A stretch of 64,000 nucleotides of DNA from Macrostomum hystrix. Taxonomy: Eukaryota > Animalia > Platyhelminthes. A program made the translations under genes and the position numbers. The stretch spans positions 4,464,001 to 4,528,000 of the forward strand of contig CATNEN010000011.1 of the NCBI GenBank assembly GCA_950097015.1, read 5' to 3'. The notes under the pieces were generated by a model. That model saw only the letters and a list, made by a program, of their open reading frames with translations, did no database searches and was not told where the DNA came from. Positions within the stretch are counted from its first letter, which is position 1. Each line of letters begins with the position of its first letter. This document shows, piece by piece, positions 555-25,934 of this stretch.

Positions 555-1880
555 CTTTTCACACTTTTTCAGGAGAAGCTGCTGAAGAGTTCCTGCGACG
601 CAGACCTTCCGGATCCCGGGCCTGTTTTACCCTGTCCTACGCTGCCGTCTATTGTTGTCTTCTCTCTGTCTGACGGCCAAGCAATTGACACTGTTTGTCA
701 ACGTCTCTGTGCGTGTACTCGAGCTTTTAGTGCCCTGAAGATTCGAGTTCGCGAAGGTTTCCGTCGATGCGGTCACGATCAAGTTGCTGTCGTACAGCTG
801 GTCGCTGATTCGACTAAAGCAGCCTTCCTACACAGTGTTTACGGCAGCGGTGGAAAGTGCCAGGCGGAGCATAGAAGAAACGGAGCTATTTGGTTGCAAG
901 CAGCAGTTCATCCAACAGTTCTAAGTCCGACTGAAAATGCTTCTTTCTCTTCGCGCCGTCAGCCTGCAATTTGGCGCTTGCCTTCAAGTCGGCCGGTACA
1001 GCGTTTGCGTCAACAGGTACTGCACGATATTCGGCAGTTGATTGCTGTCGCCGACATCACTGCGCTCCGAACACTATCTGCTTTTATTCGCTGCTTGTCT
1101 AGCATGCAGCGAATGCCTCAAAGGCGGCGACGACGAACACAGAACGGAAACCAACTGTATGCGGACGAGCGGCAGCAGGAAGAGGAAGAGAGGAAGAAGC
1201 AGCAGCAGGAAGAGGAAGAGAGGAAGAAGCAGCAGGAAGAGGAAGAGAGGAAGAAGCAGCAGCAGGAAGAGGAAGAGAGGAAGAAGCAGCAGGAAGAGGA
1301 AGAGAGGAAGAAGCAGCAGCAGGAAGAGGAAGAGAGGAAGAAGCAGCAGGAAGAGGAAGAGAGGAAGAAGCAGCAGCAGGAAGAGGAAGAGAGGAAGAAG
1401 CAGCAGGAAGAGAGGAAGAAGCAGCAGCAGGAAGAGGAAGAGAGGAAGAAGCAGCAGGAAGAGGAAGAGAGGAAGAAGCAGCAGCAGGAAGAGGAAGAGA
1501 GGAAGAAGCAGCAGGAAGAGAGGAAGAAGCAGCAGCAGGAAGAGGAAGAGAGGAAGAAGCAGCAGGAAGAGGAAGAGAGGAAGAAGCAGCAGGAAGAGGA
1601 AGAGAGGAAGAAGCAGCAGCAGGAAGAGGAAGAGAGGAAGAAGCAGCAGCAGGAAGAGGAAGAGAGGAAGAAGCAGCAGCAGCAGGAAGAGGAAGAGAGG
1701 AAGAAGCAGCAGCAGCAGGAAGAGGAAGAGAGGAAGCAGCAGCAGGAAGAGGAAGAGAGGAAGAAGCAGCTGGTTACAAAGACGAGAAAGCGAAATATGG
1801 AGATACTCAGTCGGACAGATCCCTTAGCTCCAAAACGAGCATTGCGGCAGCGTCTGCAGTTGGTCAAGAATAATCGGTAA
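491..1880 (+). CDS. Putative accessory gene of the transposon (unknown N-terminal domain + long Q/E/R/K charged helix); candidate exon 1 491-508, exon 2 from 573
   Basis: The frame of ORF 894-1880 is open without stops back to 498. A pyrimidine-rich acceptor ttttcag ends at 572. ATGATGAAGCATAGCGAA (491-508) followed by gt would splice in frame. No family recognised; further exons may be interrupted by the LINE. Confidence 0.5.
1171..1769 (+). repeat. Purine-rich coding minisatellite (cagcaggaagaggaagagaggaagaag variants, 24-36 bp) encoding (Q)nEEEERKK
   Basis: Directly visible tandem array, about 20 units. Confidence 0.95.
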
Positions 1881-2076
1881 TAAAATCATATGGTAATGTG
1901 CTTAAAAAGGTATGCTAGTACATTTTTACGTCTCCGTTGCAGGCATCTTAGTAACCCTGAAGTCGTATTTTTCTGACAAAAACGTATCCTACATTTATTT
2001 GTCTAGTTTCAAATCAAGTAATGATGTTTATAAACTTGTCTTCCTACAGTAGTTTATAGTCACTAACTATGTATAG

Positions 2077-5000: not shown

Positions 5001-5469
5001 AAACGAGGTCCACTTCCTTTTTAAGTGCACTTGGAATAAGTATAGCGCAGTACGTTCGAAATTTGAGACGGAAGTTTCTGGGAAAACCCCCAATTTCATA
5101 TCCTTAACAGCAGAAGAAAAATCTAACTACATAATGGCTCAAGACGATAGGGAAACCGCTGAAGCTTTAGCAAAATACATCATAGAAATATCTAAAATAA
5201 GGGAACAGCTGCCCTGAGACTACGAGATTTTACTAGCATTCAACAATAGATATTTCATAATTTGTTTTATCCCTGGCGTCCCTTGTGTTTTTACTGCTCT
5301 TATTTTTAATACCTTTGCTTTCCCTTCCCAGCTCGATATTTGATTCCTACTTAACTTCGCTTTTTATGTTGCTTTTCGTTGTTCATTTAAATGTGTTGTT
5401 AAAAAATATATATATAAAAAAATCAGCACCCATAGATGGCGTGCGCGTTTTAATAATAATAATAATAAT
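2077..5469 (+). mobile_element. 5'-truncated non-LTR retrotransposon (LINE; CR1/L2/RTE-X-like, clade not resolved) nested in the DNA transposon
   Basis: Partial APE + RT + C-terminal CxxC..HFLFKC ORF; T-rich 3' UTR ending in an AT-rich tract and (AAT)6 at 5452-5469; boundaries approximate, no TSD found. Confidence 0.85.
2086..5217 (+). CDS. LINE ORF2 (endonuclease C-terminal part, reverse transcriptase, Cys/His tail)
   Basis: YIPP, GDFNART, STIDY, SRH (APE); KAAGIDG, NYRPIS, DLKSAFD, GVRQGCPLSP, YCDD, KYLG (RT); RLGNHKL..CSKCK..ENEVHFLFKC. In-frame TAG at 2074-2076, so the N-terminal APE motifs are absent. Confidence 0.92.
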   Translation: MYFRQKCDKSLEVPNCLCLYTDTKYALVLKIKQKQSEEPLYILGCYIPPENSKYYKEDIWEEIKYLIQLFSREGSVLTVGDFNARTGTLQPSTRDKFPRQNQDSEKNKHGLRLMEMCSETKSTILNGMTQGDIMGNYTFSSTLGRSTIDYAIASMDKVDIIKDFFIHPQSFLSRHCPLTVTLIFPDHVQPEHANQEKHESFPMPPRWDTETQGSYIEALNNKQSEEIIRKLQSIDAHDGKSLENLFSSLTNLLRDSVAESCAKTIIPNKFWTNRDETLRNLSKSLKYVARKKRRRPTDSALASEYNGLAKKYKQQLKKLKQMDINDCIQKMAANGTSKGFWSGLRRAEELLFPSRRLNRSQAPIADIADNLTKVFNAHPFSGTQPRRTDEAVSPEDLISCVDLDRAVKKLKRRKAAGIDGITNEHIIYGQEKLKPVLLKLFNASVRLGQTPAQWSNALITPIYKKGSRSDPKNYRPISVLPALARLFASLIYEKLETHIRTLDLLSASQIGNRKGYRTSDHIATLLTLIHNKKRRKRPFHLVFFDLKSAFDMVHHPTLFQRLRELKVSPEIIEAIQSMYSGAKFQLKISDGQATKARSITNGVRQGCPLSPLLFSLYIDPLSTMLRDSFRSDTFIKDEQINNLLYCDDLVIFGENPRELQKGLDKVSEFCQSHKLEINMQKTKVISCCPDPSKTANKLFLQGQLLDSVKEWKYLGFHINAKGTVDSHATEINKKCGYPILLLRKLASHGAVRYNQLMLYCTAMIESIALYASEAWGAFVSWNLGPWDRCLFERVNIRCCKAILQVSQNTDGNGARSELGRLPLLYNIQKRSISYWASITSRPDSIISKLLADQTYSDVGIKAKTNNEVMLNCRGISPAKAIGNHRKNFVSQFDTHWRQRTQNSSKLSHFYYSFKQYYSAEKYLQQIYNPEWRRTIASFRLGNHKLACETLRTARPKIPYANRLCSKCKTEVENEVHFLFKCTWNKYSAVRSKFETEVSGKTPNFISLTAEEKSNYIMAQDDRETAEALAKYIIEISKIREQLP

Positions 5470-5992
5470 TTACCCTTCCTATATACCCTGATACTTAAAA
5501 TGCACGTCCCTGCTTTCGTTCATTTAATATATACTTTTTGCGAGTTTTTCGACGTTAATTCTATTTTACAAGGACTGATGAACTTTGTTTGACTAAGCTT
5601 GAAAACCTGGTTCAGTTGTTCGCTTTACGTACGGTTCTAGTGTAGTAATTTTTCGCAGTAGCTAATTACGCAATGTTACGCAATAATACATGTTGTACTT
5701 TGAATGTACTTCTTATTAGACAGCTGTCACCTTCACGAAAAAGAAAAATAAATTTATTTGGTGAATGTGCACGTTCGGGTGCCTCAATGAAAAAAAGACT
5801 GAACAAATTGTGATTTCAGTACATTTCAATCAACTTTTACTCTGTGCTTTTCACTAACAAAAGGTGGTAAATGCTATTGATTCAATAAAAAGAAACTGGC
5901 AGTAAATACAGCACGTACACTTGTGCCTTGACACACGTAGCTAACTGTACAACAACTTTTGGAGAAAACGGCTGCCTATAAACAAGAAGAGA

Positions 5993-6080
5993 GGTTGGAT
6001 GGAGTCGTTACAAGCTGGATCAAAGTTGGATTGAAGTTGTTTCACGTTACATTGAGTTGTTAGAAGCTGGATCGAAGTTA
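5993..6080 (-). repeat. Degenerate internal copy of the TIR repeat modules, just downstream of the transposase stop
   Basis: gttacaagctggatcaaagttggattgaag and gagttgttagaagctggatcgaagt match right-TIR modules. Confidence 0.75.
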
Positions 6081-6111
6081 ATATATTCAGAATCGGTCTC
6101 AAATTGTATCG

Positions 6112-9100
6112 CTACTGGCCTGATGTTTCCTCCGAGTTAGTAATCGTGTAAATGTACAGGTTAGCCCTGTTTCCCAGAGGTGGCTGGCGTCCACGCTCTA
6201 CAGCGGCGGTCATGACACCCTTGCTTCTTGCCAAGTCGTCGTATTTAATAGTTCCTGAGGCGTACCAGATGCGGGACAAATAGTGCCCCCCTTCCTTGAA
6301 AGTTGTAGCACGATGTTGATATCTGAAGATTGTGAATTTGCCGTTACAGCATAGAAGTAAAGTTAGCAATGCTTATGTATTAGTGCATGCAAGACAGCGA
6401 TATGTAGAGCCTTTAAAAATGAACTAAGAATACTACGTTTCTCTCTTACTGAATACTGCAGTCCGAAAAGGGGCGAACCACTTGAGAAGGGGCAGCTCGG
6501 CTGGCGCCCAATGGATCAGAGTCTGTGGAGGAGATGACTAGAACCGGTGGAGGGCTGAACTGAAACTTCGGAGCCTGACTTCGACGCACGTGATCGCAGA
6601 CTGAGCACGGCCCATAGGACTCAGAAGAAAGAAAATCTCGCAGATAATCCTCGACTGTGCCTCCAGCTGCACAGTTACTTCCAATAGTGATTGCGTGTCC
6701 ATAGGAAAGTTGCTCTGGATTTGGGCAACGCGGGTTGAGGCACCGGCTTTGATACACTAGTCTGTGCTTTGAACCAAGGAGCTTCATACATACGTCAAGC
6801 TCACTGCCGAAGAGGCCAATTTCGATTTTCTGATTTGTCCTGATGAAACGTTCACTGCTGAATGCGTCGAGTTGAAGAAGAAGCTTTGCTCGTGCATGCA
6901 AAGCTTGCTTCTCGGTGGTGGACTGCGATGCTTCGTTCAGAAAAACTACCAATGGATCCTCAACAATATGTTGGAGACTTGCTTTGAATCCAGGTTCATC
7001 CAGATAGGCTATGGTTAAGGCCGTGAGCAAGTTGTCTGCTGTGCAAGCGTTGTACACGTATACGCTCATAGATCCGCCTCGAGAATCTGGCACACCAGTA
7101 GCCAAACCGGAGTTCCTCAACGTGGCAAATTCCAATGCCTGTCGAGGTGGTCTTCCCTCTAAAGGATAGGTCCTGGAAGTCTACAAGAGAGAAATGGAAC
7201 AGGAACACAAAGTTATCACCGTCTGTTAAATGGCCACCAACTGACGAAACAATAAGCACTGTCCTACGTAGACCATTGTACTTATGGTGTACGTTATGTC
7301 CGTTGCAATAAATGAAATAAATGAAATGTAAAATACATTAATAATAAAGAGTATTATAAAATACAAGAAAATAAATACGTAATGCAATAAATAATGAACA
7401 ATCCACTACTTGCCGACGGTACATAAGCCGGTAGACGACGCTTTTTGTTTACTACAGGTTGCAGCGGGACATCTGCAGGCCGAGCCTGTTGAGAGTTGAC
7501 CATTGGACAAAAGATGTCAGACTTTCGTTTCCGGGTTTTATTCGACAATGGCACCGTTGGCGCACCTTGCTGTGGCTGCGACTCTGACGCTGGTGACGAA
7601 TGCTGCTCTGGCTGCGACTCTGACGCTGGTGGCGAATGCTGCTCTGGCTGCGACTCTGACGCTGGTGGCGAATGCTGCTCTCGCTGCGACTCTGACGCTG
7701 GTGGCGAATGCTGTGGTGGCTGCAGCTCTTCTTCAATATCATCTTCTTCCAAAGAAGTCACACCTGTTACACGGTACATGTCTCTCTTGAACAGAATTTC
7801 GTTCCCATTGTGATGAGAATGGAGCGCCTGGATGAACTCAGAGAGACTGACTTGTTTACTCTCAAAGACACTGTTCTTCATAAGGCCAATCCAGCGCTCC
7901 GTGTGCCCCTCCGTAAATCGTGAACTGCTGGGCATAATGCCGCAGATAAGAGGGAGATACGGAGTGAATGTATTGGTTATGCGTTCAGCCAAAGCCGGAC
8001 ATACATAGGCGTTCAGACTATCAGTAGACTCGTCAAACGGCAGTGCACTCACTTCCAGTTGAACTTCTTGCCGGATTTGTTCAGCCCGCTGCCAGAATGG
8101 GGACCGGCGCATTATGGTTCCGTCTGCATTGACTTCTATTTGTGAAGATTCGTTCGTCTCTTGATCCAGAGTCTCGAACTCGGCACGGACGCTCTCCATG
8201 TTGCTCATTACTCTTAGAAATTTTTTCGGACAACATCCTAGATGCCGATCCATTCTTTCAACTACGGCTTCCGTAGGAGCCATGAGCACAAGGTAGATGG
8301 CTCTCAACAGCCTGTCAGCTGTTTGAATGCTGTCGATCGCTACCATGCACGCCATAGACCGCAGCCAGAACTGTTTGACTGCCCTGTTACTGCAATTGGT
8401 TACTTCCTTCAAGCGAGTCATCTCCTTGACTAGATGACTTCGGCCAAGGCCGATGACAGGAAGGGGATCCCAATCGCTGTCCTTAGTCAAGTGATGAAAG
8501 CATTCTTTGATGTAGAGCGACAGCGATAGACCATGAAAGCAGCCGATGAGTCCGTGTAAAGTGGCAAAATTGAAGTCTGTAACCACCTGCGAAACGCGAA
8601 CTGTTGACAAAAATGTCGTACATTCTCTAAACCAAACGTCCAGGCAAAAGCGCAGGGTGATTCCTGTCTGAGATGTCGATAGAATCTCCAACAATGGCAT
8701 CACTTTCCCACCAACGGTAGGGTTCTGAAGCACCAGAGCGTGATAGTAGATGGGCTTGGTGCAACTGCTGGGGCGCTGATGGATTGGAGCAGCAGTTGAA
8801 TCCATTCCCATACGTATGGGCCAGCCCCTCAGCTGCATCTCCCGTAGACTCTGAAAGGGACGGGAATGGAATAGAATGATGGTCTCGGCCCGACCCTCAC
8901 TCTGGATAACCTTTCTGATATACGCGGGTTGTAGGACCCTCTCAAGTCGGCGCAGTTCTATCAGGTCATCCATGTCTGGAACTCCCAGCTCAGCTCTGCG
9001 CAGTCGCTCAGCTGCAATGCGTAGGGCCTCTGACGAAGGCACCTCACTGAGGGGTTCGTTGGCGGCAATGGCCGCTGCGACCCTGTAAGAGTTCGAAACC

Positions 9101-13657: not shown

Positions 13658-14687
13658 TCCATGTACCTTGGCTTAACAACTTAACAAGACAAGCTGCTTG
13701 CCTGTGCCAAAAAATCTACCACTAGGCCTAAAAGCAAGAGCACCTATATTTTTTATAATTAAATGTAAATCTATCATTTTGACTAGTTATTGATTGAAAT
13801 AAATATAGAAACATTATATAGTCAATATTGTAGAGTAGTATAGTAGACAGCAGTTGATTGTCACTATTGCTAGGCCTACCTGTTTGCTTTTTATGTCTTG
13901 TAGGTTTTTTAAACTTTAATTAAGAACTCTATAAGTATAATTCTTTAGATTAGAATAAATAAAAATTATTTTAGTGTTTATATATATTTTTTCTTGCCTA
14001 ACTAGACTGGTTTTAAACTTATTCTTTTGAGTTTGACAGTTTGACACTGAGGCAAAATTTGTTTCATTAAAATAAATCGAGACCTTCCTGAGTAGACTTC
14101 AACAATTCAGTGCCAATTTAAAGATCTGAAAGATATTTTCCATATAAATGCTTCGAAATTTTCTAGTACACAATTCTGTAAATATGATACTGGTCTAAAT
14201 AACTTTAGCAATTATTTGTCATTTATCTGGTTGCACCTCTTTAACTCTAACAGTCAAAATATGCTATAAGGATCTAGTAGAACCACTTAAAAGCTAGCAA
14301 GAAAGAGGCCTGAAGTTTAGAAAACAGAAACTGATATCATATATAGTTTAGAGTCAAGGGATACAAATTGTCATGTACTTTTGATATGTTGTCTACTTTT
14401 AAATAATGTTTGCTTCTAAATAATTTATTTTGTACTGCACCAAGATAAATAACGTATAGTATATTGCATTAAAAATTTCTTTTTTGTTGTGTTGTTTCTA
14501 ACCTAGCTGCTGAGAGTAAAGGAATTGTAGAAACAACTATGCTTTTCCTGGTGTTGTACTCTCTGCTATTATATTAAAACTCAATATAATTCAAGGTTAT
14601 TGTGTTCTCTAAAATGTTAGCAATTGCAATGATGGTAACTTATTAAAGGAGGTTGACAGAAAAAATTATTTTCCAAATATAATGGCT

Positions 14688-17169
14688 AATTGTCTAGGTT
14701 ATATTGGCCAGAATATAATTGTCTAGGCTATATTGGCCAGAATATAATTGTCTAGGCTATATTGGCCATAATATAAATGTCCAGGCTATATTGGCCAGAC
14801 TATAATTGTCCAGGCTATATTGGCCAGAATATAATTGGCCAGAATATAATTGTCCATGCTATATTGGCCAGAATATAATTGGCCAGAATATAATTGTCCA
14901 GGCTATATTGGCCAGAATATAATTGTCCAGGCTATATTGGCCAGAATATAATTGTCCAGGCTATATTGGCCAGAATATAATTGTCCAGGCTATATTGGCC
15001 AGAATATAATTGTCCAGGCTATATTGGCCAGAATATAATTGTCCAGGCTATATTGGCCAGAATATAATTGTCCAGGCTATATTGGCCAGAATATAATTGT
15101 CCAGGCTATATTGGCCAGAATATAATTGTCCAGGCTATATTGGCCAGAATATAATTGTCCAGGCTATATTGGCCAGAATATAATTGTCCAGGCTATATTG
15201 GCCAGAATATAATTGTCCAGGCTATATTGGCCAGAATATAATTGTCCAGGCCATATTGGCCAGAATATAATTGTCCAGGCTATATTGGCCAGAATATAAT
15301 TGTCCAGGCCATATTGGCCAGAATATAATTGTCCAGGCTATATTGGCCAGAATATAATTGTCCAGGCTATATTGGCCAGAATATAATTGTCCAGGCTATA
15401 TTGGCCAGAATATAATTGTCCAGGCTATATTGGCCAGAATATAATTGTCCAGGCCATATTGGCCAGAATATAATTGTCCAGGCTATATTGGCCAGAATAT
15501 AATTGTCCAGGCTATATTGGCCAGAATATAATTGTCCAGGCCATATTGGCCAGAATATAATTGTCCAGGCTATATTGGCCAGAATATAATTGTCCAGGCC
15601 ATATTGGCCAGAATATAATTGTCCAGGCTATATTGGCCAGAATATAATTGTCCAGGCTATATTGGCCAGAATATAATTGTCCAGGCTATATTGGCCAGAA
15701 TATAATTGTCCAGGCCATATTGGCCAGAATATAATTGTCCAGGCTATATTGGCCAGAATATAATTGTCCAGGCCATATTGGCCAGAATATAATTGTCCAG
15801 GCTATATTGGCCAGAATATAATTGTCCAGGCTATATTGGCCAGAATATAATTGTCCAGGCCATATTGGCCAGAATATAATTGTCCAGGCTATATTGGCCA
15901 GAATATAATTGTCCAGGCTATATTGGCCAGAATATAATTGTCCAGGCTATATTGGCCAGAATATAATTGTCCAGGCTATATTGGCCAGAATATAATTGTC
16001 CAGGCCATATTGGCCAGAATATAATTGTCCAGGCTATATTGGCCAGAATATAATTGTCCAGGCTATATTGGCCAGAATATAATTGTCCAGGCCATATTGG
16101 CCAGAATATAATTGTCCAGGCTATATTGGCCAGAATATAATTGTCCAGGCTATATTGGCCAGAATATAATTGTCTAGGCTATATTGGCCAGAATATAATT
16201 GTCCAGGCTATATTGGCCAGAATATAATTGTCCAGGCCATATTGGCCAGAATATAATTGTCCAGGCTATATTGGCCAGAATATAATTGTCCAGGCTATAT
16301 TGGCCAGAATATTTAATTGTCCAGGCTATATTGGCCAGAATATAATTGTCCAGGCTATATTGGCCAGAATATAATTGTCCAGGCTATATTGGCCAGAATA
16401 TAATTGTCCAGGCTATATTGGCCAGAATATAATTGTCCAGGCCATATTGGCCAGAATATAATTGTCCAGGCTATATTGGCCAGAATATAATTGTCCAGGC
16501 TATATTGGCCAGAATATAATTGTCCAGGCCATATTGGCCAGAATATAATTGTCCAGGCTATATTGGCCAGAATATAATTGTCCAGGCTATATTGGCCAGA
16601 ATATAATTGTCCAGGCTATATTGGCCAGAATATAATTGTCCAGGCTATATTGGCCAGAATATAATTGTCCAGGCCATATTGGCCAGAATATAATTGTCCA
16701 GGCTATATTGGCCAGAATATAATTGTCCAGGCTATATTGGCCAGAATATAATTGTCCAGGCCATATTGGCCAGAATATAATTGTCCAGGCTATATTGGCC
16801 AGAATATAATTGTCCAGGCTATATTGGCCAGAATATAATTGTCTAGGCTATATTGGCCAGAATATAATTGTCCAGGCTATATTGGCCAGAATATAATTGT
16901 CCAGGCCATATTGGCCAGAATATAATTGTCCAGGCTATATTGGCCAGAATATAATTGTCCAGGCTATATTGGCCAGAATATTTAATTGTCCAGGCTATAT
17001 TGGCCAGAATATAATTGTCCAGGCTATATTGGCCAGAATATAATTGTCCAGGCTATATTGGCCAGAATATAATTGTCCAGGCTATATTGGCCAGAATATA
17101 ATTGTCCAGGCTATATTGGCCAGAATATAATTGTCCAGGCTATATTGGCCAGAATATAATTGTCCAGGC
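14688..17169. repeat. 29-bp satellite array, ~85 units (ttgtccaggctatattggccagaatataa)
   Basis: Directly visible 29-bp period; rare variants ccatatt, gtctagg and a 31-bp unit. Confidence 0.98.
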
Positions 17170-17530
17170 AAGGAGGGATGGTTAATCAAAGAGGACATTG
17201 TTATGTGCTCTTATGATGGTATATTCCTATGTATTGATTCAAGTTAAGCAAGATGTTAAGCAGGATTTCAGAGTCAGTTTAGTTCTAGCTATGCTTTATG
17301 AATTCAGTTTGTATTCTAGATCTTAGAGATGCAGTGGATGAAGTGTGGCAAGCAGGGGTAGGTCACAGGCAGACACTATTTTCTCTCAGTGCAAGGACTC
17401 ATTTATTGCATTGACAGAATGTTCTGGAAAAATCTCAAAAGTCCTTGCAAGCAAGGTTTCACATTGGAGGAAGAAAAGAGAGTACTTTTTATTTTATGTA
17501 ATGCACATAATTGGGAATTGCATTGCTTAA

Positions 17531-19593
17531 ATGTCGCGCTTCAGTATACCACCAACAATAAACTTCCAGTCACTGCCAGCTGAGCCGCCTTCGGCAGGAG
17601 ATCTGATCCATTGGCTGACCAGCTGCCATCAACTTGATGAAGCTGCGCTGGCAGACACAGCCGCCCAGTTGACCGGCCTGGCTGAAGGCCAGCTGCGCGA
17701 CCTGTTCTCGGCTGCCATCGCGGCAGATTCTGGTCAGCTGCCCAGCTTCAGCTGTGTCATGCTGCCATTGAGTCATCGACCCCGACTGTTGGCATTTCGG
17801 CTGCGCCTGTGGCCAGATTTAGATGATTCAACCGAGGATGCTTGGCACGCTGCCGACTCAGATAGGGTTGAATGCGATGCTGAGGATAAAAAACAAAGTC
17901 TAGGCGGGTGAGCTGTTTTGATTTGATTTATTATTAACTTTAGACGCGTGTGTTTAGACTCGTAAAACCCACATTTTTCCTCTTTTTCTGTATGTCCCAA
18001 AAGTTTTCGACAAATCGATACTACAAGTATAATTCATCAGCATCGTCGCGAATTATTCACCTATTCTCGTCGGTTGTCTAGTTGTTAAACCACCAATATA
18101 GACATAAATTTGCGCTCACAATGTTGGCTATTATTGCTGATTATGACCAATATAGATTCGCCCTAGATAGTTTATACAGAGCAATGCTAGATGGTCTTGT
18201 CACCGGGGTCTTCGACTAGGACTGCTTTGAGAGTTAATTCATCGTAAAGGCCGGACATGTTGGCCGAAACGGGCCAAAAACGACTGTTCATTGCAGATTT
18301 AAACAAATAAGTTATTTAGCCTGTGCACTATTTAAAGATATTGCTTATCTAACGTAGCGGTATAGAGTAGGAGAGAGAGAGTCTTCAATTATGCACACCA
18401 ACTGCATTGCAACCAACCAACTGCAGCTCGGCATCAGCTGAGGCTTGCGCCAATCCCTCACACTACACCCGGCGATCTTGGTGCACCGTGTTCTATTACG
18501 AACTCGACAACCGCGTCGGCGATCCGTTTCGCGCTATCGAGCCCTGCCTACGCGTTGACGGAGGTGGCGGCGGCGGCGGATTCTTTGATCGGCACGGCAG
18601 GCGTCGATTCTGTTTGGCGCCGTTGTGGAACGCCGACAGGCCGCCGGCGGCATTCCAGGTGCGCCGATTCATCGGCCAGGGCGTCTCTCTGCAGATGTGC
18701 CGGGGTGGCACCGTCCTGCTGCACTGTCGCTCGCCTTTGCCAGTTAGTGCTTCTCATTTTATAATTTAACAGGCTAATATGCTTGGGACGTAAGTGCCTG
18801 AGCACCAAAGGTCCCCGCGCTCGATTCCGCGGCGAGGCCACATTCATTTGGGCGCAGACGCGGAGAGAAGGCTTGTCGTGCAATTTACGCCCTTGAGGGC
18901 CAACCTCCAAGGCACAGTGAGAGTACACTGCCTGCCGATGAGAGAGTCCAGGCAGATGTACACACCTGTCCTCAGGAGTCAGCGAAATGGGCAGAATTGC
19001 CTCCTCGCTGGCTGCGGGTCCAGTGTCACCAAAATGATGTGCTATTGTCCGCAGCCCTCCTGCAAAATATATTAATTTAAATTTACTAATATGCTACCTA
19101 GGCTACTCTGGTTAGTAGTGTAATAAGGTTCATAGATTGAAACTAAATTTTTCATTAAAAATTTTAAATCGAGCTTAGGAAAGTTCGCATCACATAGTCA
19201 AATCTCTTCTAAGCTCTGCCAATCATCCTCCTGTCGACACAGGTGTTCGTCCAGTCGCCCAACGCGAGCCTTCAGCGCGGCTGGCATCCGGCCACAGTCT
19301 GCCGAGTCCCACCCGGTGGCAGCCTCTGTATATTCTCCGACGATCTGTTCCTTCGCTACCTGGCCGATTGTCGCCATTTTGAGGAGGCCTACAGCCTCAT
19401 TAGAATGTGCCACATCAGGGTGTCATTCGCCAAAGGCTGGGGCAGCGATTATCGTCGACAGAGGATCACAGCTTCCCCCTGCTGGCTGGAGATTGTGCTG
19501 GCTAGGCCGCTCATCTGGCTCGATAGGGTGCTGGTGACAATGGGCGGTCCCGCTAATCTGAACCTCACCTTGGAATCCCAAATCCCAAGTTGA
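17531..19593 (+). CDS. Atypical Smad2/3-like protein, 347 aa; exons 17531-17907, 18427-18742, 19243-19593
   Basis: MH2 motifs WCTVFYYE..RVG, FCL, RRFIGQGV, VFVQSPN, GWHPATVCRVPPG, RMCHIRVSFAKGWG.DYRRQ..SPCWLE, WLDRVL..MG.P; degenerate MH1 (LIHW, GQLRDL, CVMLP, WPDL, CANPSHY). Phases match (2/2, 0/0); 1044 nt in total. Confidence 0.9.
18794..19033 (+). mobile_element. tRNA-derived SINE (family A) in Smad intron 2
   Basis: Aligns with the copies at 59378-59749, 41268-41541 and 45505-45750 (ctcgattccgcggcgaggccacatt ... gggcagaattgcctcctcgctggctgcgg). Confidence 0.75.
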
Positions 19594-21429
19594 AAATCTT
19601 AATAATATCCGATGATGGCGTGTGTTTTGAATTTTCTGTAAATATGTCCCTAACATGTTACTTAAAGTAACGTACGCAAAAATTCAATGTGAATGAGTTT
19701 TATTCATTTTTGTTTAGCTTTCAAAGCGAAACCAGGTTTTGTATCTATGTGTGCGTAAGATAAAAAACATTTCCAAAAGTACTCAAAAGTTACTCAGTAA
19801 TTTTTATCGGACTAGCTTCGAACTAACTGCTTTCAAGTAATCAGCATTTTCGTTTCCAAAGCTTTGCTACCATAAATCCAAATAGTTGTTGGCTCAATGC
19901 ACAGATTTGCCTTTTGTCTACTTTGAGTAGCATGGTAGTACATGTCTCGATTTTTTATTCATTTTGCTTATCACTTAGCGCCAGCAATTTTGCGATTCAC
20001 TGATATCAATTGTATCGGCGCCAAAAATAACTAACTTTCAATCGGTTCTCTTGCAAATGATTTTACTTTTGCAATTACTTAATCAATATACCCAGTCCAT
20101 CATGAACTATTTTACAAGCACGCTTTGCGCCAGATAAATTTTTATTTATCTGTTTCTATATAAATAACTAAATACTGAAAGTTTAAGGGTCTCTTCATCA
20201 TTTAAATACAATAATTTTGTCTATGTTTTTTCAAATCAAGCTATTAAAGAAATTTCATAGCGCCATTAGTTACCCTGAGTATCTTAATTTCTTTATATCA
20301 TCACTATATCACTATATCTTTATATCTTTTCAAGCTAATAAAGATCAGATATCTAGATAACGAAGATTCCCTATCAAGCTAATAAAGATCTCATATCAAG
20401 CTACTCAAGGTCCTCTATCACATCACATCGCATCCATCACGTCGCAGAGATAGGAGAGGGTGAATAGCCCTTTTAAAGCAGACAATGGTTTATTTCTCAA
20501 GTTAGGAAACTAAGCCGCTGCGAGTAAGAGAAAGTTATTTGAATCAATAGTAAATGTCAGAGGCGCAAATTCAAAGCAGTTAATTTGTTAAGCAATATGC
20601 AGTTAGAATCGTGATGTTTAATACGAGTGTGTGGGATCCACTCGCAGAAGGGCGCCGACTCTGCGGGGCATCCCCAAGATTAGGCGGCGCAGAAAGTCCT
20701 TGGGAAGCTGCTGCTAAGCGTTTTTAATGGCTTGACGCAGCTCCGCAACGTTCTGTGGTGGATTCTCTTTTCGAATGCTGCGTTTCAGCATTCGGGTACC
20801 GCGCGAGAGCCAGCGCAGAGTGCTTTAGAATAAACCAATATGGGAGGGGGAAGAAAAGTCGCTGATGGACAGGACACTGCTAAATGTGATATTTCTCAGC
20901 AGGTTTTGTCAGCTCGGTAAGCGAGGGACGCCCTAGCTAAAGCAATAAGTCAGCATAGCTGAGAATGCCAGACTGCCTCGTACCGTTTCAGGAAGTTTGA
21001 GAAGCGATGCTTTCTAACTTTTAAACTTCCATTTCGCTTGGAAATTTCCATTCCAGCCACCTAACTACCCTTCTTTTTGCCGTTTTTAACTTAAAACTTT
21101 TTCAATGCAAGCAGTTTGTCTTAGTTAGTTTAATAGTTTTTTCAAAATTAGTTTTTAGGATTAATACGCCAACGCTTCAACTTGGTACTGCAGTTTATGG
21201 TATGATGATCGCTAATTGAACGCAAAAAAGTGATGCCAATATTTTTTACCGATTTTGCTAATGAATCCTTAGTGGCCGAGAGTAGCCTTAATGAGAAAAA
21301 CAAATAGTTTTTATCGAAAAACTGATTTTACTGGATTGATTGATTTTGATAGGAGAAGGATCAGTTTCAAGCCTTTCTTAACGTTTTATTTTAACAAGCG
21401 CTTTATAGTACCACGAACAGTTTCTTTTA

Positions 21430-22181: not shown

Positions 22182-25100
22182 TCAAAATTGCGCGACAAAA
22201 AAATCTGGCTGCCTCAGAGTCCGATTCGAGCGTCTGGGCCCAGCAGGCGCCGGTTCGTCTAGCAGCTCCTGCCAGGTCTCACGCGGGTCGGCAGCCGGAC
22301 TGGGCGGCCGGTCGCTCTCTGCAGCGGGTGGGTCGGCGGCGGGCTGCGGGACAGCGGGTTGCGGCCGCCTCGCCACGAACGCCTTCAGCCGGTCGTGGTG
22401 CACCACCGAGCTCCGCCTCCGCCCGGTGGGCTTGGAGATCCGGTAGGTGACTGGGCCCAGCTTCTCGAGCACTCGGTACGGCCCCAACCACCGCCGGCGG
22501 AGCGCCTTGGACTGGCCCTTCTGCACCGCCGGGTTGTTGAGCATCACCAGCTGGCCGACTTGGAACGGAGTGAAGTGCTGGCGCTTGTCGTACTGCTGCT
22601 TCCGCGACCGCTGCGTCGACTGCAGGCGCTGCCGCACTAGCTGCAGGCCGGCGCGGGCGTCCGCCAGCGCGTCCGTGACGACCGGCCTCTCACCGGCGGC
22701 GGGCAGGCTGAGCTCGGCTGGGATCCGGGGGTCGCGGCCGTGCAGCACCGCGTACGGTGACCGCTTGGTGGTGCTGTGGACCGACGAGTTGTACGCCCAG
22801 ATGACGTACGGCAGGAAAGCCGCCCACCTGTCCTGCTGCTCCATGCAGTAGGCCGCCAGCATGTCGCCCAGAGTCCGGTTGAATCGCTCGACCACCGGAT
22901 TGCCGCTGGGGTGGAATGGTGTCGTCCTGGTCTTTCGAATGTCGAGCAGCCGGCACAGCTCCTGGAAGACGTCGCTTTCGAACTGGCGACCTTGATCGGA
23001 GTGGATGACCTCGGGCGACCCGTGGCGGAGGACGACGCTGCGCAGCATGGCTTCAGCGACCGTGCGAGTCTCGATGTTGGTCGCTGGGGCCGCTTCGACC
23101 CACTTGGAGAACACGTCGGTGAAGCAGATGATGTACTTCTGACCGGTCTCTGTGGCCGGCAGCGGTCCTTTGATGTCCACCTGCACCATCTCCCAGGGAG
23201 TTGACGGCACGGTGTTGTCCTGCAGCGGCGCCCTTTGGTGCTGGTGCGGTACCTTGCGACGCTGGCACACCTCGCAGCTGCTCACCCAGTGCTGGACGTC
23301 GTCCTTCAGGCCGGGCCACCAGGCTCTGTTGACGACCCTCGCTAGCGTCCTGTCCAGTCCGAGGTGCCCGCTTGCCGGGTCGTCGTGCAGCTGCCTCAGA
23401 AGCTCCTGGCGAAGCTGCAGCGGAATGACGGGGAAGCCGCTTCTCCTGATGACGCCGTCCTCGCCAAGCTCCAGGTTCTCCGACCTCACCAGGCTCTCTG
23501 CGTCGTCTGCGGCCTTGCCTCGCCGGGGCCTCCGTCCGATGAGCACCTGGCGAGCCGCTGCCAGCACCGGGTCATCGGCCTGCGCCGCGCTGATTTCCTC
23601 GTCCGACCAGGCGGGTGTCAGCCGGGTCGCCGCCGCCCGGCTCAGCGCGTCCGCCACCACGTTCTCGCGACCAGGCCTGAAGAGCAGCTTGAAATTGATC
23701 TCCTGCAGGAGCGTGATCCACCTGGCCAGGCGACCTTCGGGTTCCTTGGTGTTCAGCAGCCCTTGCAGCGGCTTGTGGTCGGAGAAGACGAGAATTTCGC
23801 CGGCGGACGCCAAGTAGTTCCGGAAGTGCTTCATGGCCCACACGACCGCCAGAAGCTCTCTGTGGGTGGTCGAGTAATTGCGCTCTGCCTTATTCAGGAC
23901 TCTCGACGCGTAGGCGACCGGGCATTCGACGCCTTCGTGGAGCTGGCTGAGGACTCCTGCGATGGCCACGCCGCTGCTGTCGCAGCACAGCCGGAATCCC
24001 TTGGAGAAATCCGGCAGCTTCAGCACTGGGGGTGCCGACAGCGCCGACTTCAGCTCGCGCAGGGCTGCCTCGCACTCTGCCGTCCACCGAAACTGCCGAC
24101 TTTTCTGAGTCGCCTGGTGCAGCGGATTCGCAATGCTGGCGAAGTGCGGCACGAACCGCCGGTAGAAGCCCAGCATGCCGACGAGCCGGCGAACGTCCTC
24201 AGCGCACTCGGGCGTCGGGATGGACTGGATGGCGCTGACCTTGTCCTGGGTTGGCTGGATCCCATCGGCCGAAATCTTGTGCCCCAGGTACTCGACCTCC
24301 TGGAAGCAGAAGCAGCTCTTGCGCTTGTTCAGCTTGAGGCCCGCCGACTGCAGCCTTCCCAGGACTTCCTTCAGCGTCTGCGCGTGCTGCTCGAACGTCG
24401 TGCTGAACAGGATCAGGTCGTCCATGTAGGTGAGCACCTCCGTCCAGTTCAGGCCCGCCATCGTCAAGTCCATCAGGCGCTGGAAGGTCGCCGGGGCGTT
24501 GCAGAGGCCGAAGCCGAGCTTCCTGTACTGCATCAGGCCTTGCGTGGTGTAGAAGGCGGTCTTCTCCCGGTCCTGCTCGCGCAGCTCGACCTGCAGGAAC
24601 CCTTGGCGGAGATCGAGCGTGCTGAACCAGCTGCTGCCAGTGAGCGCGTCCAGAGCGACAGACAGCGGCGGCAGCGGGTAGGCGTCCTTCACGGTGCACG
24701 AGTTGAGGGCCCTCCAGTCGGTGCAGATGCGGATTTCGTTGTTTTTCTTGCGCACCACCAGCAGATTGCTCGCCCACGGACTGCATGACGGTTCGATGAT
24801 CCCGTGACGCAGCATCTCGCTGATCTTGTCGTCCACCTGCTGTCTGAAGTTCAGTGGCACTGTCCGCTGCCTGTGCTTGATGGGGCGGCTGCCGGGTTCC
24901 AGGTTGATCTCGTGCTGCAGTAGGTGCGTGGTCCCCAGGTCGAACTCGTGACTGGCGAATGCCAGCTCATGCTGGTTCAGCAGGGCTTCGATGACCTCGC
25001 GCTGCGACCGGCTCAGCTCCGGGTTGATGTTGAAGCCGGCCTCCTCCGAAGCTTCACCGTCGGGCCCGTGAGGCTCGGCAGCGTCGAAGTTGCCGATGGC

Positions 25101-25934
25101 CTGATTCTGGTAGAGCACCACCGGGTCGGCGCTCAGGTTGCAGACTCCCACCGGCAGGTTGCCGTCCGCGCTGGAGACCACCAGAGCCCGGTTCGGCAGC
25201 AGGCCGGTCTTGTCGACGAAGTCAGAGCTGGGCTCGAACAGACCCTGCTCAACGTACGATGCCACCTTGACCGGGATGATGACGCGGCTGCGGGCTGGGA
25301 TGGACACGGTGCTGGCGACTCTGGCGACCACGGCGGTGGGCACCACCCGGCAGGCCGGCATGGAGTTCCTGTCTGGCAGGACTGGGATCCTGGTTGACCC
25401 CAGCAGGACAGAAGACGACATGAGATCCACGCTGAAGGTTGAGCACATCTTGCTGATGGCGTCCATGCCGAGCACGCATTCCGGCTGAATGTCGGCGACC
25501 ACCGTCACCGGGTGCTCCATGGGCGGCAGTCCGCCCACCTGAATGGCCAGCGTTGCGCATGCCGGAGACTCCAAGCGTCGACCATCGATCCCGACCGGAG
25601 TGCTGAGAGGAGGATGAAGCTGAGCTGCGACTCCCAGAGCTCGAAACTGGGCAGCTGATACGAGCGTCACCTGCGCGCCCGTGTCGAACAGCCACCTGCA
25701 GGGCCGGCCTGCGATGCTGCCGGGCAGGAAGAGCGAAGCGGTTTGGGCCTTGCTAGGCAGGGCTGGTGATGGCCCACGGTCACCAGTCCTCAGAAGTTTC
25801 CCGAAGCCGGGGTCGGGCAGACCTCGGCCCGGTGCCCTTTGCCTGAGCAGCGGCTGCACACGGGCGGCACGGCTGGCGCGGCCTGCCTGGGGCACTGGGC
25901 CGCGAAATGGCCGGGCTGAGCGCAGTTGAAGCAT
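22182..25934 (-). CDS. pol: Gypsy Pol (protease-RT-RNase H-integrase, GPY/F), expressed by -1 frameshift
   Basis: LFDTGA (PR); YMDD (RT); CDSSG..RELLA..DHKPL..ADALSR (RNase H); H..GH..C..C, VDIKGP, SDQGRQF, VERFNR (IN); LGPYRV. No stops. Confidence 0.96.
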   Translation of the reverse strand: MLQLRSARPFRGPVPQAGRASRAARVQPLLRQRAPGRGLPDPGFGKLLRTGDRGPSPALPSKAQTASLFLPGSIAGRPCRWLFDTGAQVTLVSAAQFRALGVAAQLHPPLSTPVGIDGRRLESPACATLAIQVGGLPPMEHPVTVVADIQPECVLGMDAISKMCSTFSVDLMSSSVLLGSTRIPVLPDRNSMPACRVVPTAVVARVASTVSIPARSRVIIPVKVASYVEQGLFEPSSDFVDKTGLLPNRALVVSSADGNLPVGVCNLSADPVVLYQNQAIGNFDAAEPHGPDGEASEEAGFNINPELSRSQREVIEALLNQHELAFASHEFDLGTTHLLQHEINLEPGSRPIKHRQRTVPLNFRQQVDDKISEMLRHGIIEPSCSPWASNLLVVRKKNNEIRICTDWRALNSCTVKDAYPLPPLSVALDALTGSSWFSTLDLRQGFLQVELREQDREKTAFYTTQGLMQYRKLGFGLCNAPATFQRLMDLTMAGLNWTEVLTYMDDLILFSTTFEQHAQTLKEVLGRLQSAGLKLNKRKSCFCFQEVEYLGHKISADGIQPTQDKVSAIQSIPTPECAEDVRRLVGMLGFYRRFVPHFASIANPLHQATQKSRQFRWTAECEAALRELKSALSAPPVLKLPDFSKGFRLCCDSSGVAIAGVLSQLHEGVECPVAYASRVLNKAERNYSTTHRELLAVVWAMKHFRNYLASAGEILVFSDHKPLQGLLNTKEPEGRLARWITLLQEINFKLLFRPGRENVVADALSRAAATRLTPAWSDEEISAAQADDPVLAAARQVLIGRRPRRGKAADDAESLVRSENLELGEDGVIRRSGFPVIPLQLRQELLRQLHDDPASGHLGLDRTLARVVNRAWWPGLKDDVQHWVSSCEVCQRRKVPHQHQRAPLQDNTVPSTPWEMVQVDIKGPLPATETGQKYIICFTDVFSKWVEAAPATNIETRTVAEAMLRSVVLRHGSPEVIHSDQGRQFESDVFQELCRLLDIRKTRTTPFHPSGNPVVERFNRTLGDMLAAYCMEQQDRWAAFLPYVIWAYNSSVHSTTKRSPYAVLHGRDPRIPAELSLPAAGERPVVTDALADARAGLQLVRQRLQSTQRSRKQQYDKRQHFTPFQVGQLVMLNNPAVQKGQSKALRRRWLGPYRVLEKLGPVTYRISKPTGRRRSSVVHHDRLKAFVARRPQPAVPQPAADPPAAESDRPPSPAADPRETWQELLDEPAPAGPRRSNRTLRQPDFFVAQF
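25760..25802 (-). other. Predicted -1 ribosomal frameshift signal: slippery G GGA AAC (25802-25796), 6-nt spacer, stem-loop
   Basis: Gag ends TCG GGA AAC TTC TGA and pol is the -1 frame; CTGGTGA/TCACCAG stem at 25786-25780 and 25769-25763. Confidence 0.8.

What the first reader, a model, noticed from the sequence alone, without database searches (positions are those of the whole stretch)
17531..19593. Stripped-down Smad: R-Smad-type MH2 but no DNA-binding hairpin, no basic helix, no linker and no SSxS tail
Seen: MH1 aligns at LIHW, GQLRDLFSAAI, CVMLP, WPDL and CANPSHY, with candidate Zn ligands (three Cys, one His) retained. The RSLDGRLQV beta-hairpin is missing (CVMLPLSHRPRLL), and the KSLVKKLKK helix is replaced by QLTGLAE. 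CANPSHYTR runs straight into the MH2 start (SWCTVFYYE), so the Pro-rich linker with PPxY/MAPK sites is absent. The C-terminus is ESQIPS. The L3 loop (DYRRQR) and GWHPATVC are Smad2/3-like. Established: the hairpin reads GTCT, SSxS phosphorylation activates R-Smads, and L3 sets receptor specificity. Inference: an independently evolved inhibitory/decoy Smad that binds activin/TGF-beta type I receptors or Smad4 without being activated. The ORF is intact across three phase-matched exons, which argues against simple decay.
Basis: partly seen in the sequence, partly recalled or inferred. Interest (0 to 1): 0.8.

Follow-up and report, generated by a model that had tools for sequence, protein, structure and literature searches.

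The report
Tail-less, linker-less flatworm Smad2/3 paralog
A Macrostomum flatworm expresses a fast-evolving extra copy of its activin/TGF-beta signal-carrier gene (Smad2/3) that keeps the protein-docking half but has lost the receptor-phosphorylated tail, the regulatory linker and the DNA-contact and nuclear-import parts, so it looks like a natural dominant-negative form, although its function is untested.

Summary
Window 17570-19593 (+) is a three-exon gene. Assembled RNA contigs from several runs, with no mismatches, use exactly the predicted GT..AG introns and read through the stop after ...ESQIPS into a ~660-nt 3'UTR.

- **MH2 domain:** clearly R-Smad type. The best solved-structure matches are Smad2/3 (7e-37), ahead of Smad1, Smad4 and Smad7.
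- **N-terminus:** a badly eroded MH1. Pfam does not detect it, but Smith-Waterman alignments against shuffled controls support it. So do the CxNPxHY motif and an intron shared with a M. lignano Smad2/3 gene.
- **Losses:** linker, SSxS tail, basic helix and beta-hairpin are all absent.

- The mRNA starts at an acceptor at 17569/17570, probably by trans-splicing to a leader ending in AUG. The genomic ATG at 17531 is therefore probably unused.
- Hairpin loss is not special to this gene. The canonical Macrostomum Smad2/3 genes already lack the hairpin.

No close relative turned up among 1.84 billion representative proteins (best 57-60% identity in exon 3). Trees place the gene on a very long branch beside the Macrostomum Smad2/3 genes, with moderate support.

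The phosphoserine pocket and the trimer-interface residues are kept. A decoy or dominant-negative role is therefore the best guess, but it is inference only.

An earlier scan note flagged a different hairpin-less R-Smad elsewhere in this genome.

The parts
17531..17569 (+). It ends in the acceptor AG at 17568-17569.
   Evidence: No contig of 4 runs lies on 17200-17568. Contig matches begin at 17569, with 20-21 unmatched letters 5' of it.
17570..17907 (+). Exon 1, an eroded MH1 domain. SLPAEPP..LIHW aligns with the canonical ILPFTPP..LLGW. The basic helix is replaced by AAQLTGLAE. CVMLP (17753-17767) holds the first Zn-ligand Cys. It is followed directly by SHRPR (17771-17785), where the beta-hairpin is deleted. 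WPDL and VECD follow.
   Evidence: SW scores of 38-75 against six MH1 domains, versus 24-28 +/- 4-5 for shuffles. Pfam and PDB find no hit. RNA contig with 0 mismatches.
17908..18426 (+). Intron 1 (519 nt, GT..AG, phase 2, splitting a Gly codon). It lies between the second and third Zn ligands of MH1.
   Evidence: Joint seen in X2, X3 and X9. M. lignano Smad2/3 gene Mlig016086 has an intron in the same phase at an equivalent place, 6 versus 7 codons before the Cys. Starfish Smad2/3 has none there.
18427..18742 (+). Exon 2. The end of MH1 (CANPSHYTR, 18446-18472) is fused with no linker to the start of MH2 (WCTVFYYE from 18479). It also holds a Gly7 insert (18560-18580) and an altered L1 motif, RFCLAPLWNADR.
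   Evidence: Pfam MH2 1.3e-15. PDB best match Smad2/3, 1.9e-13. Custom MH1 model hits C..CANPSHYTR.
18743..19242 (+). Intron 2 (500 nt, GTTAGT..CAG, phase 0), holding a high-copy interspersed repeat at 18770-19083.
   Evidence: Joint seen in X2, X3 and X9. Other repeat copies in the window. M. lignano Smad2/3 genes have no intron at this place.
19243..19593 (+). Exon 3 coding part, the C-terminal half of MH2. It holds GWHPATVC, the L3 loop FAKGWGSDYRRQRITASPCW (19426-19485), helix 5 WLDRVL, the tail GGPANLNLTLESQIPS (19543-19590) without SSxS, and the stop at 19591-19593.
   Evidence: Pfam MH2 4.3e-23. Smad3/Smad2 6.7e-37. The contig reads through the stop.
19594..20255 (+). 3' untranslated region (31% G+C).
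   Evidence: X2 contig reaches 20191, X3 reaches 20252 and X10 reaches 20264. No joint leaves exon 3. GC.

Best explanation
This is an expressed, fast-evolving, lineage-specific duplicate of the Macrostomum activin/TGF-beta-type R-Smad (Smad2/3) gene.

**Likely events.**
- A genomic deletion fused the end of MH1 directly to MH2, removing the ~100-residue linker with its PY and kinase sites.
- The basic helix/NLS of MH1 was replaced.
- The already degenerate hairpin region shrank further.
- The C-terminal SSxS was replaced by ...TLESQIPS.

**Product.** The mRNA is probably trans-spliced at 17570 to a leader ending in AUG. That would give a ~335-residue protein starting M-SLPAEPP, the point where normal Smads start.

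**Inferred mechanism.**
- The protein keeps the MH2 fold, a Smad2/3-like L3 loop, the phosphoserine-binding pocket and the trimer-interface residues.
- It could therefore still dock on an activated type I receptor and accept the phosphorylated tail of another R-Smad.
- It cannot be activated by tail phosphorylation, cannot donate a phospho-tail, and lacks the canonical DNA-binding and nuclear-import elements.
- The net effect would be to damp or buffer activin/TGF-beta-type signalling as a non-productive competitor (a natural dominant negative).

**Basis.** The gene structure, expression, domain identity and losses are shown. The origin from the Macrostomum Smad2/3 lineage is moderately supported. 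The mechanism is inferred.
For: **Structure and expression**
- Spliced contigs with 0 mismatches run through both introns and the stop.

**Identity**
- Pfam finds MH2 in exons 2 and 3.
- Exon 3 scores 129 bits against Smad2/3, versus 52 for Smad4 and 31 for Smad7.
- MH2 is 45-51% identical to R-Smads.

**MH1 remnant**
- SW scores against shuffles reach the real score in 0-2 of 1000 for residues 14-143, and in 0-27 of 1000 when the CxNPxHY motif is left out.
- A custom MH1 model gives E 1.6e-5 on C..CANPSHYTR.
- In leader-start numbering the candidate Zn ligands fall at C63, C103, C121 and H126. Smad3 has C64, C109, C121 and H126 (Smad3 numbers from my own knowledge).

**Origin**
- The careful tree groups it with M. 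lignano Smad2/3 at 94/88, and on the Smad2/3 side at 88/83.
- It shares derived residues with those genes: GWGSDY, VCR.PPG, LC.FS and TA.PCW.
- It shares a phase-2 intron in MH1 with Mlig016086.

**Constraint**
- 51 of 64 R-Smad-invariant residues are kept, against ~48% overall identity.
- The 1005-1044-nt ORF is intact despite a branch of 1.2-2.3 changes per site.
- In the two related samples there are 0 non-synonymous changes in 505 coding nt, versus 6 changes in 597 UTR nt. The Poisson P is about 0.02, which is weak.

**Start**
- The Macrostomum leader ends in ATG (PMC8629364).
- 17570 is in frame.

**Mechanism precedents**
- L3 loop, SSxS and trimer logic are reviewed in PMC11063908.
- Smad8B, which lacks SSXS, is a dominant inhibitor (PMC10167241).
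Against: - No functional data of any kind exist for this gene.
- The very long branch, about 10-20 times the median, could reflect relaxed constraint.
- The highly conserved L1 motif RFCLGLLSNVNR is altered to RFCLAPLWNADR.
- 13 R-Smad-invariant residues are changed, which might weaken the trimer interface.
- The second L3 specificity position is Arg rather than Thr, so the receptor preference is unknown.
- No orthologue was found outside near-identical samples, so long-term conservation is unproven.
- Placement beside the M. lignano genes could be long-branch attraction. A BMP-Smad placement is not rejected (p-AU 0.157).
- The leader letters themselves were not seen, so the start codon is inferred.
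Confidence: 0.55

Rival explanations
1. Acceptor-only partner or scaffold with a positive or neutral role. Like Smad4, it would join phospho-R-Smad trimers, or it would scaffold other proteins, changing complex composition rather than simply blocking signalling.
For: Smad4 also lacks SSxS and acts as the acceptor of phospho-tails (PMC11063908). The pocket and interface residues are kept. Smad7 also works as a scaffold.
Against: There is no Smad4-type activation domain, no DNA-binding hairpin and no NLS, so complexes containing it should be less active. By sequence it is far from Smad4 (52 versus 129 bits).
Confidence: 0.15
2. Expressed but functionless relic. A duplicate that lost its key parts is drifting and has not yet picked up a stop codon.
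For: The branch is very long. Four functional modules are lost. The gene sits among transposons and a minisatellite. No orthologue was found in the protein libraries. Pfam and the protein atlas do not recognise the N-terminus.
Against: The ORF of more than 1 kb is intact after more than one change per site. Conserved core residues are kept preferentially, 51 of 64. Splicing of both introns is precise and the mRNA is present in three studies. The few differences in related samples are synonymous or in the UTR. Exons are G+C-rich, with GC3 of 0.65, next to A+T-rich introns.
Confidence: 0.15
3. Neofunctionalised phosphopeptide-binding module working outside TGF-beta signalling, for example binding other phosphoproteins through the MH2 pocket.
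For: The L1 loop, the L3 position T388R and the Y324R change depart from all R-Smads (numbering from my own knowledge). Evolution is fast, and the domains used in the canonical pathway are lost.
Against: The L3 core GWGSDYRRQ and the interface residues are those of Macrostomum Smad2/3. No new domain has been gained.
Confidence: 0.1
4. Ordinary R-Smad or Smad6/7 orthologue whose odd features come from a wrong gene model, such as missed linker exons or a missed last exon.
For: Database models of the neighbouring M. lignano Smad genes are indeed faulty.
Against: RNA contigs join CANPSHYTRRS to WCTVFYYE within a single exon and read through the stop into the UTR. The only SSxS-stop strings downstream are two chance ones in stop-filled DNA with no RNA cover. 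There is no relic tail in the other frames. Smad7 is the weakest match.
Confidence: 0.03

Closest known systems
Canonical activin/TGF-beta R-Smads (Smad2/3, Smox); nearest are the Macrostomum lignano genes Mlig016086 (P0160) and Mlig017485 (P0159)
   Same: Both have an R-Smad-type MH2 with a Smad2/3-like L3 core (GWGSDYRRQ), GWHPATVC and helix 5 WLDxVL. Both have an MH1 ending in CxNPxHYTR with a phase-2 intron just before it. Both lack the standard hairpin residues.
   Different: The window gene has no linker, against ~100-115 residues in P0159/P0160. It has no SSxS, where they end CSSMS and PSSIS. It has no basic helix, where they keep VKRLRR and IKRLKK. The hairpin region is 4-5 residues shorter still. 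MH2 is only 45-53% identical to them, whereas they are ~70% identical to insect and vertebrate Smad2/3.
Inhibitory Smads (Smad6, Smad7, Dad)
   Same: No SSxS tail, a divergent N-terminal half without DNA-binding elements, and an MH2 able in principle to dock on type I receptors.
   Different: It is not related by descent. Exon 3 scores 31 bits against Smad7 and 129 against Smad2/3. It keeps helix 5 and the R-Smad pocket. It has no PY motif for Smurf recruitment. Inhibition has not been tested.
Tail-less R-Smad forms that act as dominant negatives: engineered Smad2/3 tail mutants (own knowledge) and the natural splice variant Smad8B (PMC10167241)
   Same: An R-Smad MH2 without the receptor-phosphorylated SSXS. 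Those forms block signalling.
   Different: Those are mutants or splice isoforms of a normal gene. This is a separate, diverged gene that has also lost the linker, NLS helix and hairpin.
MH1-less R-Smads of other worms: Echinococcus EmSmadA/EmSmadC and C. elegans DAF-14 (own knowledge; Echinococcus Smad set listed in PMC10073696)
   Same: Lineage-specific R-Smad derivatives with a reduced N-terminal half.
   Different: EmSmadA and EmSmadC keep the SSxS and are phosphorylated by receptors. The window gene keeps an MH1 remnant but lacks the tail.
Co-Smad (Smad4, Medea)
   Same: No SSxS. It would act only as an acceptor of phospho-tails in trimers.
   Different: Smad4 has a working hairpin, an NLS and an activation domain. 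Sequence similarity is low (52 bits).
Planarian beta-catenin4, a truncated paralogue that regulates Wnt signalling (PMC5643146; title and abstract only)
   Same: The same logic in another flatworm pathway: a paralogue that lost its output domain modulates the pathway.
   Different: A different protein family. This is an analogy only.

Membership tests
Smad family (MH2-domain proteins) | MH2 domain (Pfam PF03166) above the curated threshold | tested here: met
   Exon 2 scores 58.6 bits and exon 3 scores 82.9 bits, against a cut-off of 25. Together they cover profile positions 2-173 of 174.
Smad family (MH1-domain proteins) | MH1 domain (Pfam PF03165) detectable | tested here: inconclusive
   Pfam and PDB give no hit on exon 1, and the protein atlas finds nothing. 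A custom MH1 model hits only C..CANPSHYTR. Pairwise SW against six MH1 domains beats shuffles, and an intron is shared with Mlig016086. This is a remnant, not a recognisable domain.
Receptor-regulated Smads (R-Smads) | C-terminal SSxS (SxS) phosphorylated by type I receptors | tested here: not met
   The protein ends ...NLNLTLESQIPS*. RNA reads through the stop. There is no alternative exon and no relic in another frame.
Receptor-regulated Smads (R-Smads) | MH2 nearest to R-Smads, with an L3 loop of R-Smad type | tested here: met
   Smad3/Smad2 6.7e-37, ahead of Mad/Smad1 (about 1e-33 to 1e-34) and Smad4 (5.6e-13). The L3 core is GWGSDYRRQRITASPCW. The first specificity position is Arg as in Smad2/3, and the second is Arg instead of Thr.
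Receptor-regulated Smads (R-Smads) | Pro-rich linker with PY and kinase sites between MH1 and MH2 | tested here: not met
   CANPSHYTRRSWCTVFYYE is continuous within exon 2 and in the mRNA contig.
Receptor-regulated Smads (R-Smads) | MH1 beta-hairpin that reads GTCT (Arg, Gln and Lys contacts) | tested here: not met
   19 residues lie between the Cys and WPDL, against 30 in standard MH1. The gap falls over RSLDGRLQV. The M. lignano Smad2/3 genes, with 23-24 residues, also fail this test.
Inhibitory Smads (Smad6/7/Dad) | MH2 belongs to the Smad6/7 clade | tested here: not met
   Smad7 is the weakest PDB match to exon 3 (31 bits, residues 57-86 only) and is absent from the exon 2 matches.
Inhibitory Smads (Smad6/7/Dad) | Blocks receptor-driven R-Smad activation | not testable with these tools
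   This needs binding and reporter assays.
Co-Smad (Smad4) | MH2 of Smad4 type and a working MH1 | tested here: not met
   Smad4 chains score 52 bits on exon 3, over residues 52-100 only. The hairpin and basic helix are absent.

The most novel reading that the evidence does not exclude
Inhibitory Smads would have arisen a second time, independently of Smad6/7. A duplicate of the activin/TGF-beta R-Smad in the Macrostomum lineage was pared down to a receptor- and phospho-Smad-docking module. It now works as an endogenous dominant negative in a regeneration model animal.
Probability: 0.3. Interest if true: 0.7.

Novelty: new variant of a known kind. Interest (0 to 1): 0.5.

Why it matters
Smad architecture (MH1, linker, MH2 and an SSxS tail in R-Smads) is among the most conserved in animal signalling, and inhibitory Smads are treated as one ancient clade. 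An expressed gene that reproduces the laboratory 'dominant-negative R-Smad' design would show how pathway inhibitors can evolve from transducers by loss of parts. It would also give Macrostomum researchers a handle on activin/TGF-beta signalling in regeneration and reproduction.

Two other points matter for annotation and comparison:
- The start codon is probably donated by the spliced leader, and the gene appears to be missing from public protein sets.
- The canonical Macrostomum Smad2/3 genes themselves lack the DNA-reading hairpin, as vertebrate Smad2 and fly Smox effectively do.

Tried and rejected
- **Word-index protein search with exon 3.** It returned one unrelated 73-aa fragment. The length window hides full-length Smads, so the blank means nothing.
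- **Representative search with exon 3.** 1072 hits, none above 57-60% identity. The window's own protein is not in the libraries, so I had no reference for the spliced protein.
- I did not run structure prediction or fold search on the full protein, a Pfam scan of the joined protein, or full-length database searches.
- **Exon 1 against Pfam, PDB and the protein atlas.** Nothing was found.
- **Custom MH1 model on residues 14-114 alone.** It scored 0.8 bits, reached by 15 of 2000 shuffles, which is marginal.
- **Exact look-up of the neighbouring retrotransposon protein.** Not on record. The homology search instead gave 87% identity to a M. lignano protein.
- **Large 90-row tree.** The query's place is unresolved.
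- **Hunt for an alternative SSxS exon or a frameshifted relic tail.** None found.
- **Rfam and tRNA scans of the window.** Nothing, including for the intron-2 repeat.
- **dN/dS.** Not possible. The related samples differ at only 2 coding sites, and the paralogues are saturated.
- **Leader letters.** The contigs' 5' ends were not printed and read laying allows only one call, so trans-splicing is inferred.
- **Literature.** I found no paper on Macrostomum Smads of this kind, nor on the presence or absence of Smad6/7 in Macrostomum.
Full report
**What is there.** On the + strand, three G+C-rich exons (58-65% G+C) sit between A+T-rich introns (39-47%). Joined at 17907|18427 (phase 2) and 18742|19243 (phase 0), they give one open frame ending ...ESQIPS* at 19593.

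Public run data confirm the model directly.
- A 1624-nt contig of run X2 lies on 17569-17906, 18426-18742 and 19243-20191 without a single mismatch.
- Runs X3 and X9 carry the same two GT..AG joints.
- Low-depth contigs also cross the intron borders, as unspliced precursor would.
- The runs are only guessed to be RNA or DNA, but contig sets of ~50 Mb that hold spliced forms behave like transcriptomes.
- The contigs read through the stop into ~660 nt of 3'UTR, and no joint leaves exon 3.
- Downstream there are only two chance SSxS-stop strings, in stop-filled DNA with no RNA cover. No relic tail exists in another frame.

The missing linker and missing SSxS tail are therefore real features of the mRNA, not annotation gaps.

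**The start.** No contig covers 17200-17568. Matches begin at 17569, the G of the acceptor ttccAG|TCACTG, and two independent assemblies carry 20-21 further letters that do not lie on the stretch.
- Earlier notes of this scan (s1-316733 and others) say that genes of this genome often take their AUG from a trans-spliced leader.
- The published Macrostomum lignano leader ends ...TTGCATG, and 20-30% of Macrostomum genes are trans-spliced (PMC8629364, PMC10468722).
- Position 17570 is in frame, so leader-AUG plus TCA CTG CCA gives M-S-L-P-A-E-P-P.
- That aligns with the canonical Smad N-terminus M-S-x-(I/L)-L-P-F-T-P-P.
- I could not see the leader letters, so this is an inference at roughly 70%.
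- The genomic ATG at 17531 lies in the removed part and is probably unused.

**Organism.** The neighbouring Ty3/gypsy polyprotein is 87% identical over its full length to a M. lignano protein. The best exon-3 hit in 1.84 billion representatives is a M. lignano Smad. The window therefore comes from a Macrostomum flatworm, either M. lignano or a congener. The gene lies among transposons and just downstream of an 85-copy 29-bp minisatellite.

**The MH2 half.**
- Pfam finds MH2 across exons 2 and 3.
- Against solved structures, exon 3 scores 129 bits with Smad3/Smad2, 117-121 with Mad/Smad1, 52 with Smad4 and 31 with Smad7. Exon 2 ranks the same families in the same order. This is an R-Smad MH2 of Smad2/3 flavour, not a Smad6/7 or Smad4 MH2.
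- Identity to R-Smads over the whole MH2 is only 45-51%, yet 51 of 64 columns invariant in 19 R-Smads are retained.
- Mapping by my own knowledge of human Smad3 numbering onto that alignment:
  - Pocket residues: K378, Y384 and R386 are kept, and K333 is Arg.
  - Trimer-interface residues: D258, R268 and D408 are kept.
- Departures:
  - a Gly7 insert after VDG;
  - the L1 motif RFCLGLLSNVNR changed to RFCLAPLWNADR;
  - GGEVFAECLSD changed to GGTVLLHCRSP;
  - Arg at the second L3 specificity position;
  - a tail five residues longer than normal, with T-L-E where S-x-S would be.

**The MH1 half.** Pfam, PDB phmmer and the protein atlas do not recognise exon 1. A model built from 37 MH1 domains hits only C..CANPSHYTR (11 bits, E 1.6e-5 for one target). 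Residues 14-114 alone score 0.8 bits, reached by 15 of 2000 shuffles.

Pairwise Smith-Waterman tests are clearer.
- Residues 14-143 score 52-75 against five MH1 domains, versus 25-29 +/- 4-5 for shuffles, reached in 0-2 of 1000.
- Without the C-terminal motif the scores are 38-54, reached in 0-27 of 1000.
- The alignment to a beetle Smad3 runs from LPAEPP..LIHW to CANPSHYTR.

Three further points support homology.
- In leader-start numbering the candidate zinc ligands fall at C63, C103, C121 and H126. Smad3 has C64, C109, C121 and H126 (Smad3 numbers from my own knowledge).
- Intron 1 is phase 2 and lies six codons before the Cys of CANPSHY.
- The M. lignano Smad2/3 gene Mlig016086 has a phase-2 intron seven codons before the Cys of CVNPMHY, while a starfish Smad2/3 gene has no intron there.

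Exon 1 is thus a true but heavily eroded MH1. The basic helix (KSLVKKLKK, carrying the NLS per PMC11063908) is replaced by AAQLTGLAE. The stretch from the first Cys to WPDL is 19 residues instead of 30, with the gap over RSLDGRLQV.

**Hairpin loss is inherited.** The canonical M. lignano Smad2/3 paralogues have an MH1, a ~100-115-residue linker and an MH2 that is ~70% identical to insect and vertebrate Smad2/3.
- P0159 ends CSSMS and P0160 ends PSSIS.
- Their hairpin region reads CVTAAVAQGDPEPGHV.. and CVTATVGDSADPEPLHV.. respectively. That is 23-24 residues, without the Arg, Gln and Lys contacts.
- A tapeworm Smad2 keeps RSLDGRLQV.
- This matches the earlier scan note of another hairpin-less R-Smad in this genome (s1-351253). 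It parallels vertebrate Smad2 and fly Smox, which do not use the hairpin (PMC11063908).
- The losses special to the window gene are the linker, the SSxS tail and the basic helix.

**Origin.**
- In a 90-row MH2 tree the gene sits on a long branch (1.19 changes per site, against a median of 0.34), unresolved within R-Smads. Smad2/3 proteins are nearest by path.
- In a 24-row careful tree it groups with the two M. lignano Smad2/3 proteins (94/88) and on the Smad2/3 side (88/83). Neither branch reaches the starred level, and forcing it with BMP Smads is not rejected (p-AU 0.157).
- It shares derived residues with the M. lignano genes: Ser-Asp in GWGSDY, Arg in VCR, Leu-Cys..Phe-Ser, and Ala in TA.PCW. 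It also shares the MH1 intron.
- The most economical history is a DNA-level duplication of the Macrostomum Smad2/3 gene. A deletion then fused the exon carrying the MH1 end to the MH2 exon, and the tail was lost. Intron 2 has no counterpart in the M. lignano genes.
- No closer relative exists in the libraries searched. The related samples (organisms B, C and D) are 99-100% identical, so they add no depth.

**Is it functional?** Evidence for constraint:
- an intact ORF after more than one change per site;
- preferential retention of the conserved core;
- precise splicing and presence in three studies;
- in samples C and D, 2 synonymous and 0 non-synonymous differences in 505 coding nt, against 6 in 597 UTR nt (Poisson P about 0.02 for zero non-synonymous changes). 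This rests on few sites, low-depth contigs and the assumption that the UTR is neutral.

Evidence for relaxed constraint:
- the long branch;
- changes in normally invariant motifs;
- no demonstrated orthologue.

**How it most likely works (inference).**
- R-Smads dock on activated type I receptors through the L3 loop and are released after SSxS phosphorylation.
- The phospho-tail then binds the pocket of a neighbouring MH2 to build trimers with Smad4 (PMC11063908).
- A protein with the loop, pocket and interface but no tail can occupy receptors or cap phospho-Smad complexes without passing on a signal.
- Lacking hairpin, NLS and linker, it would add no DNA contact and would escape linker-kinase and Smurf control.
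- Engineered tail-less Smad2/3 (own knowledge) and the natural variant Smad8B (PMC10167241) act as dominant inhibitors in this way.
- I rate this mechanism at about 0.4-0.5 given a functional gene.
- The rivals are a Smad4-like acceptor or scaffold role, a new role outside the pathway, and a drifting relic.

**Verdict.** This is a new variant of a known kind and of moderate interest.

Noticed in passing
window 14687-17169: A 29-bp minisatellite (TAATTGTCCAGGCTATATTGGCCAGAATA), 85 copies at 97% match, ends about 400 nt upstream of the Smad gene's acceptor site.
   Followed up: partly
window 18770-19083 (intron 2); also 41267-41541, 59377-59711, 45561-45740, 44202-44300: A high-copy interspersed repeat. 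Its word depth is 1,000-7,000 in the contig sets of four samples, against ~15 for the exons. It has a tRNA-T-arm-like stretch, but ARAGORN and Rfam find nothing.
   Followed up: partly
L001 6001-12895 and L003 3001-5457 (M. lignano Smad2/3 genes Mlig016086, Mlig017485): The canonical Macrostomum Smad2/3 genes have the MH1 DNA-binding hairpin replaced (CVTA.V..DPEP..HV) while keeping the basic helix, linker and SSxS. The tapeworm Hymenolepis keeps the standard hairpin.
   Followed up: partly
L001 3095-4674, 6001-12895, 16433-18895: In M. lignano the canonical Smad2/3 gene lies between a BcrAD_BadFG (N-acetylglucosamine-kinase-like) gene and a RhoGEF-BAR-SH3 (DNMBP-like) gene.
   Followed up: no
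proteins P0002 (PAA67835.1) and P0158 (UniProt A0A1I8...): Public models of Mlig017485 look faulty. P0002 has an out-of-frame stretch in place of the first half of MH2, and P0158 repeats the second half of MH2.
   Followed up: partly
window 22182-25934 (-), 2086-5217 (+), 38928-40622 (+): An intact Ty3/gypsy polyprotein ORF (protease, RT, RNase H, integrase; 87% identical to a M. lignano protein), a LINE ORF (endonuclease plus RT), and a gag-protease ORF of another retroelement.
   Followed up: partly
window 47861-57015 (+): A run of long exons rich in fibronectin type III domains, probably one large cell-surface protein gene.
   Followed up: no
window 18560-18580: A Gly7 insert in the MH2 loop after VDG is encoded by a GGN/GGC run. 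It may vary in length between individuals.
   Followed up: no
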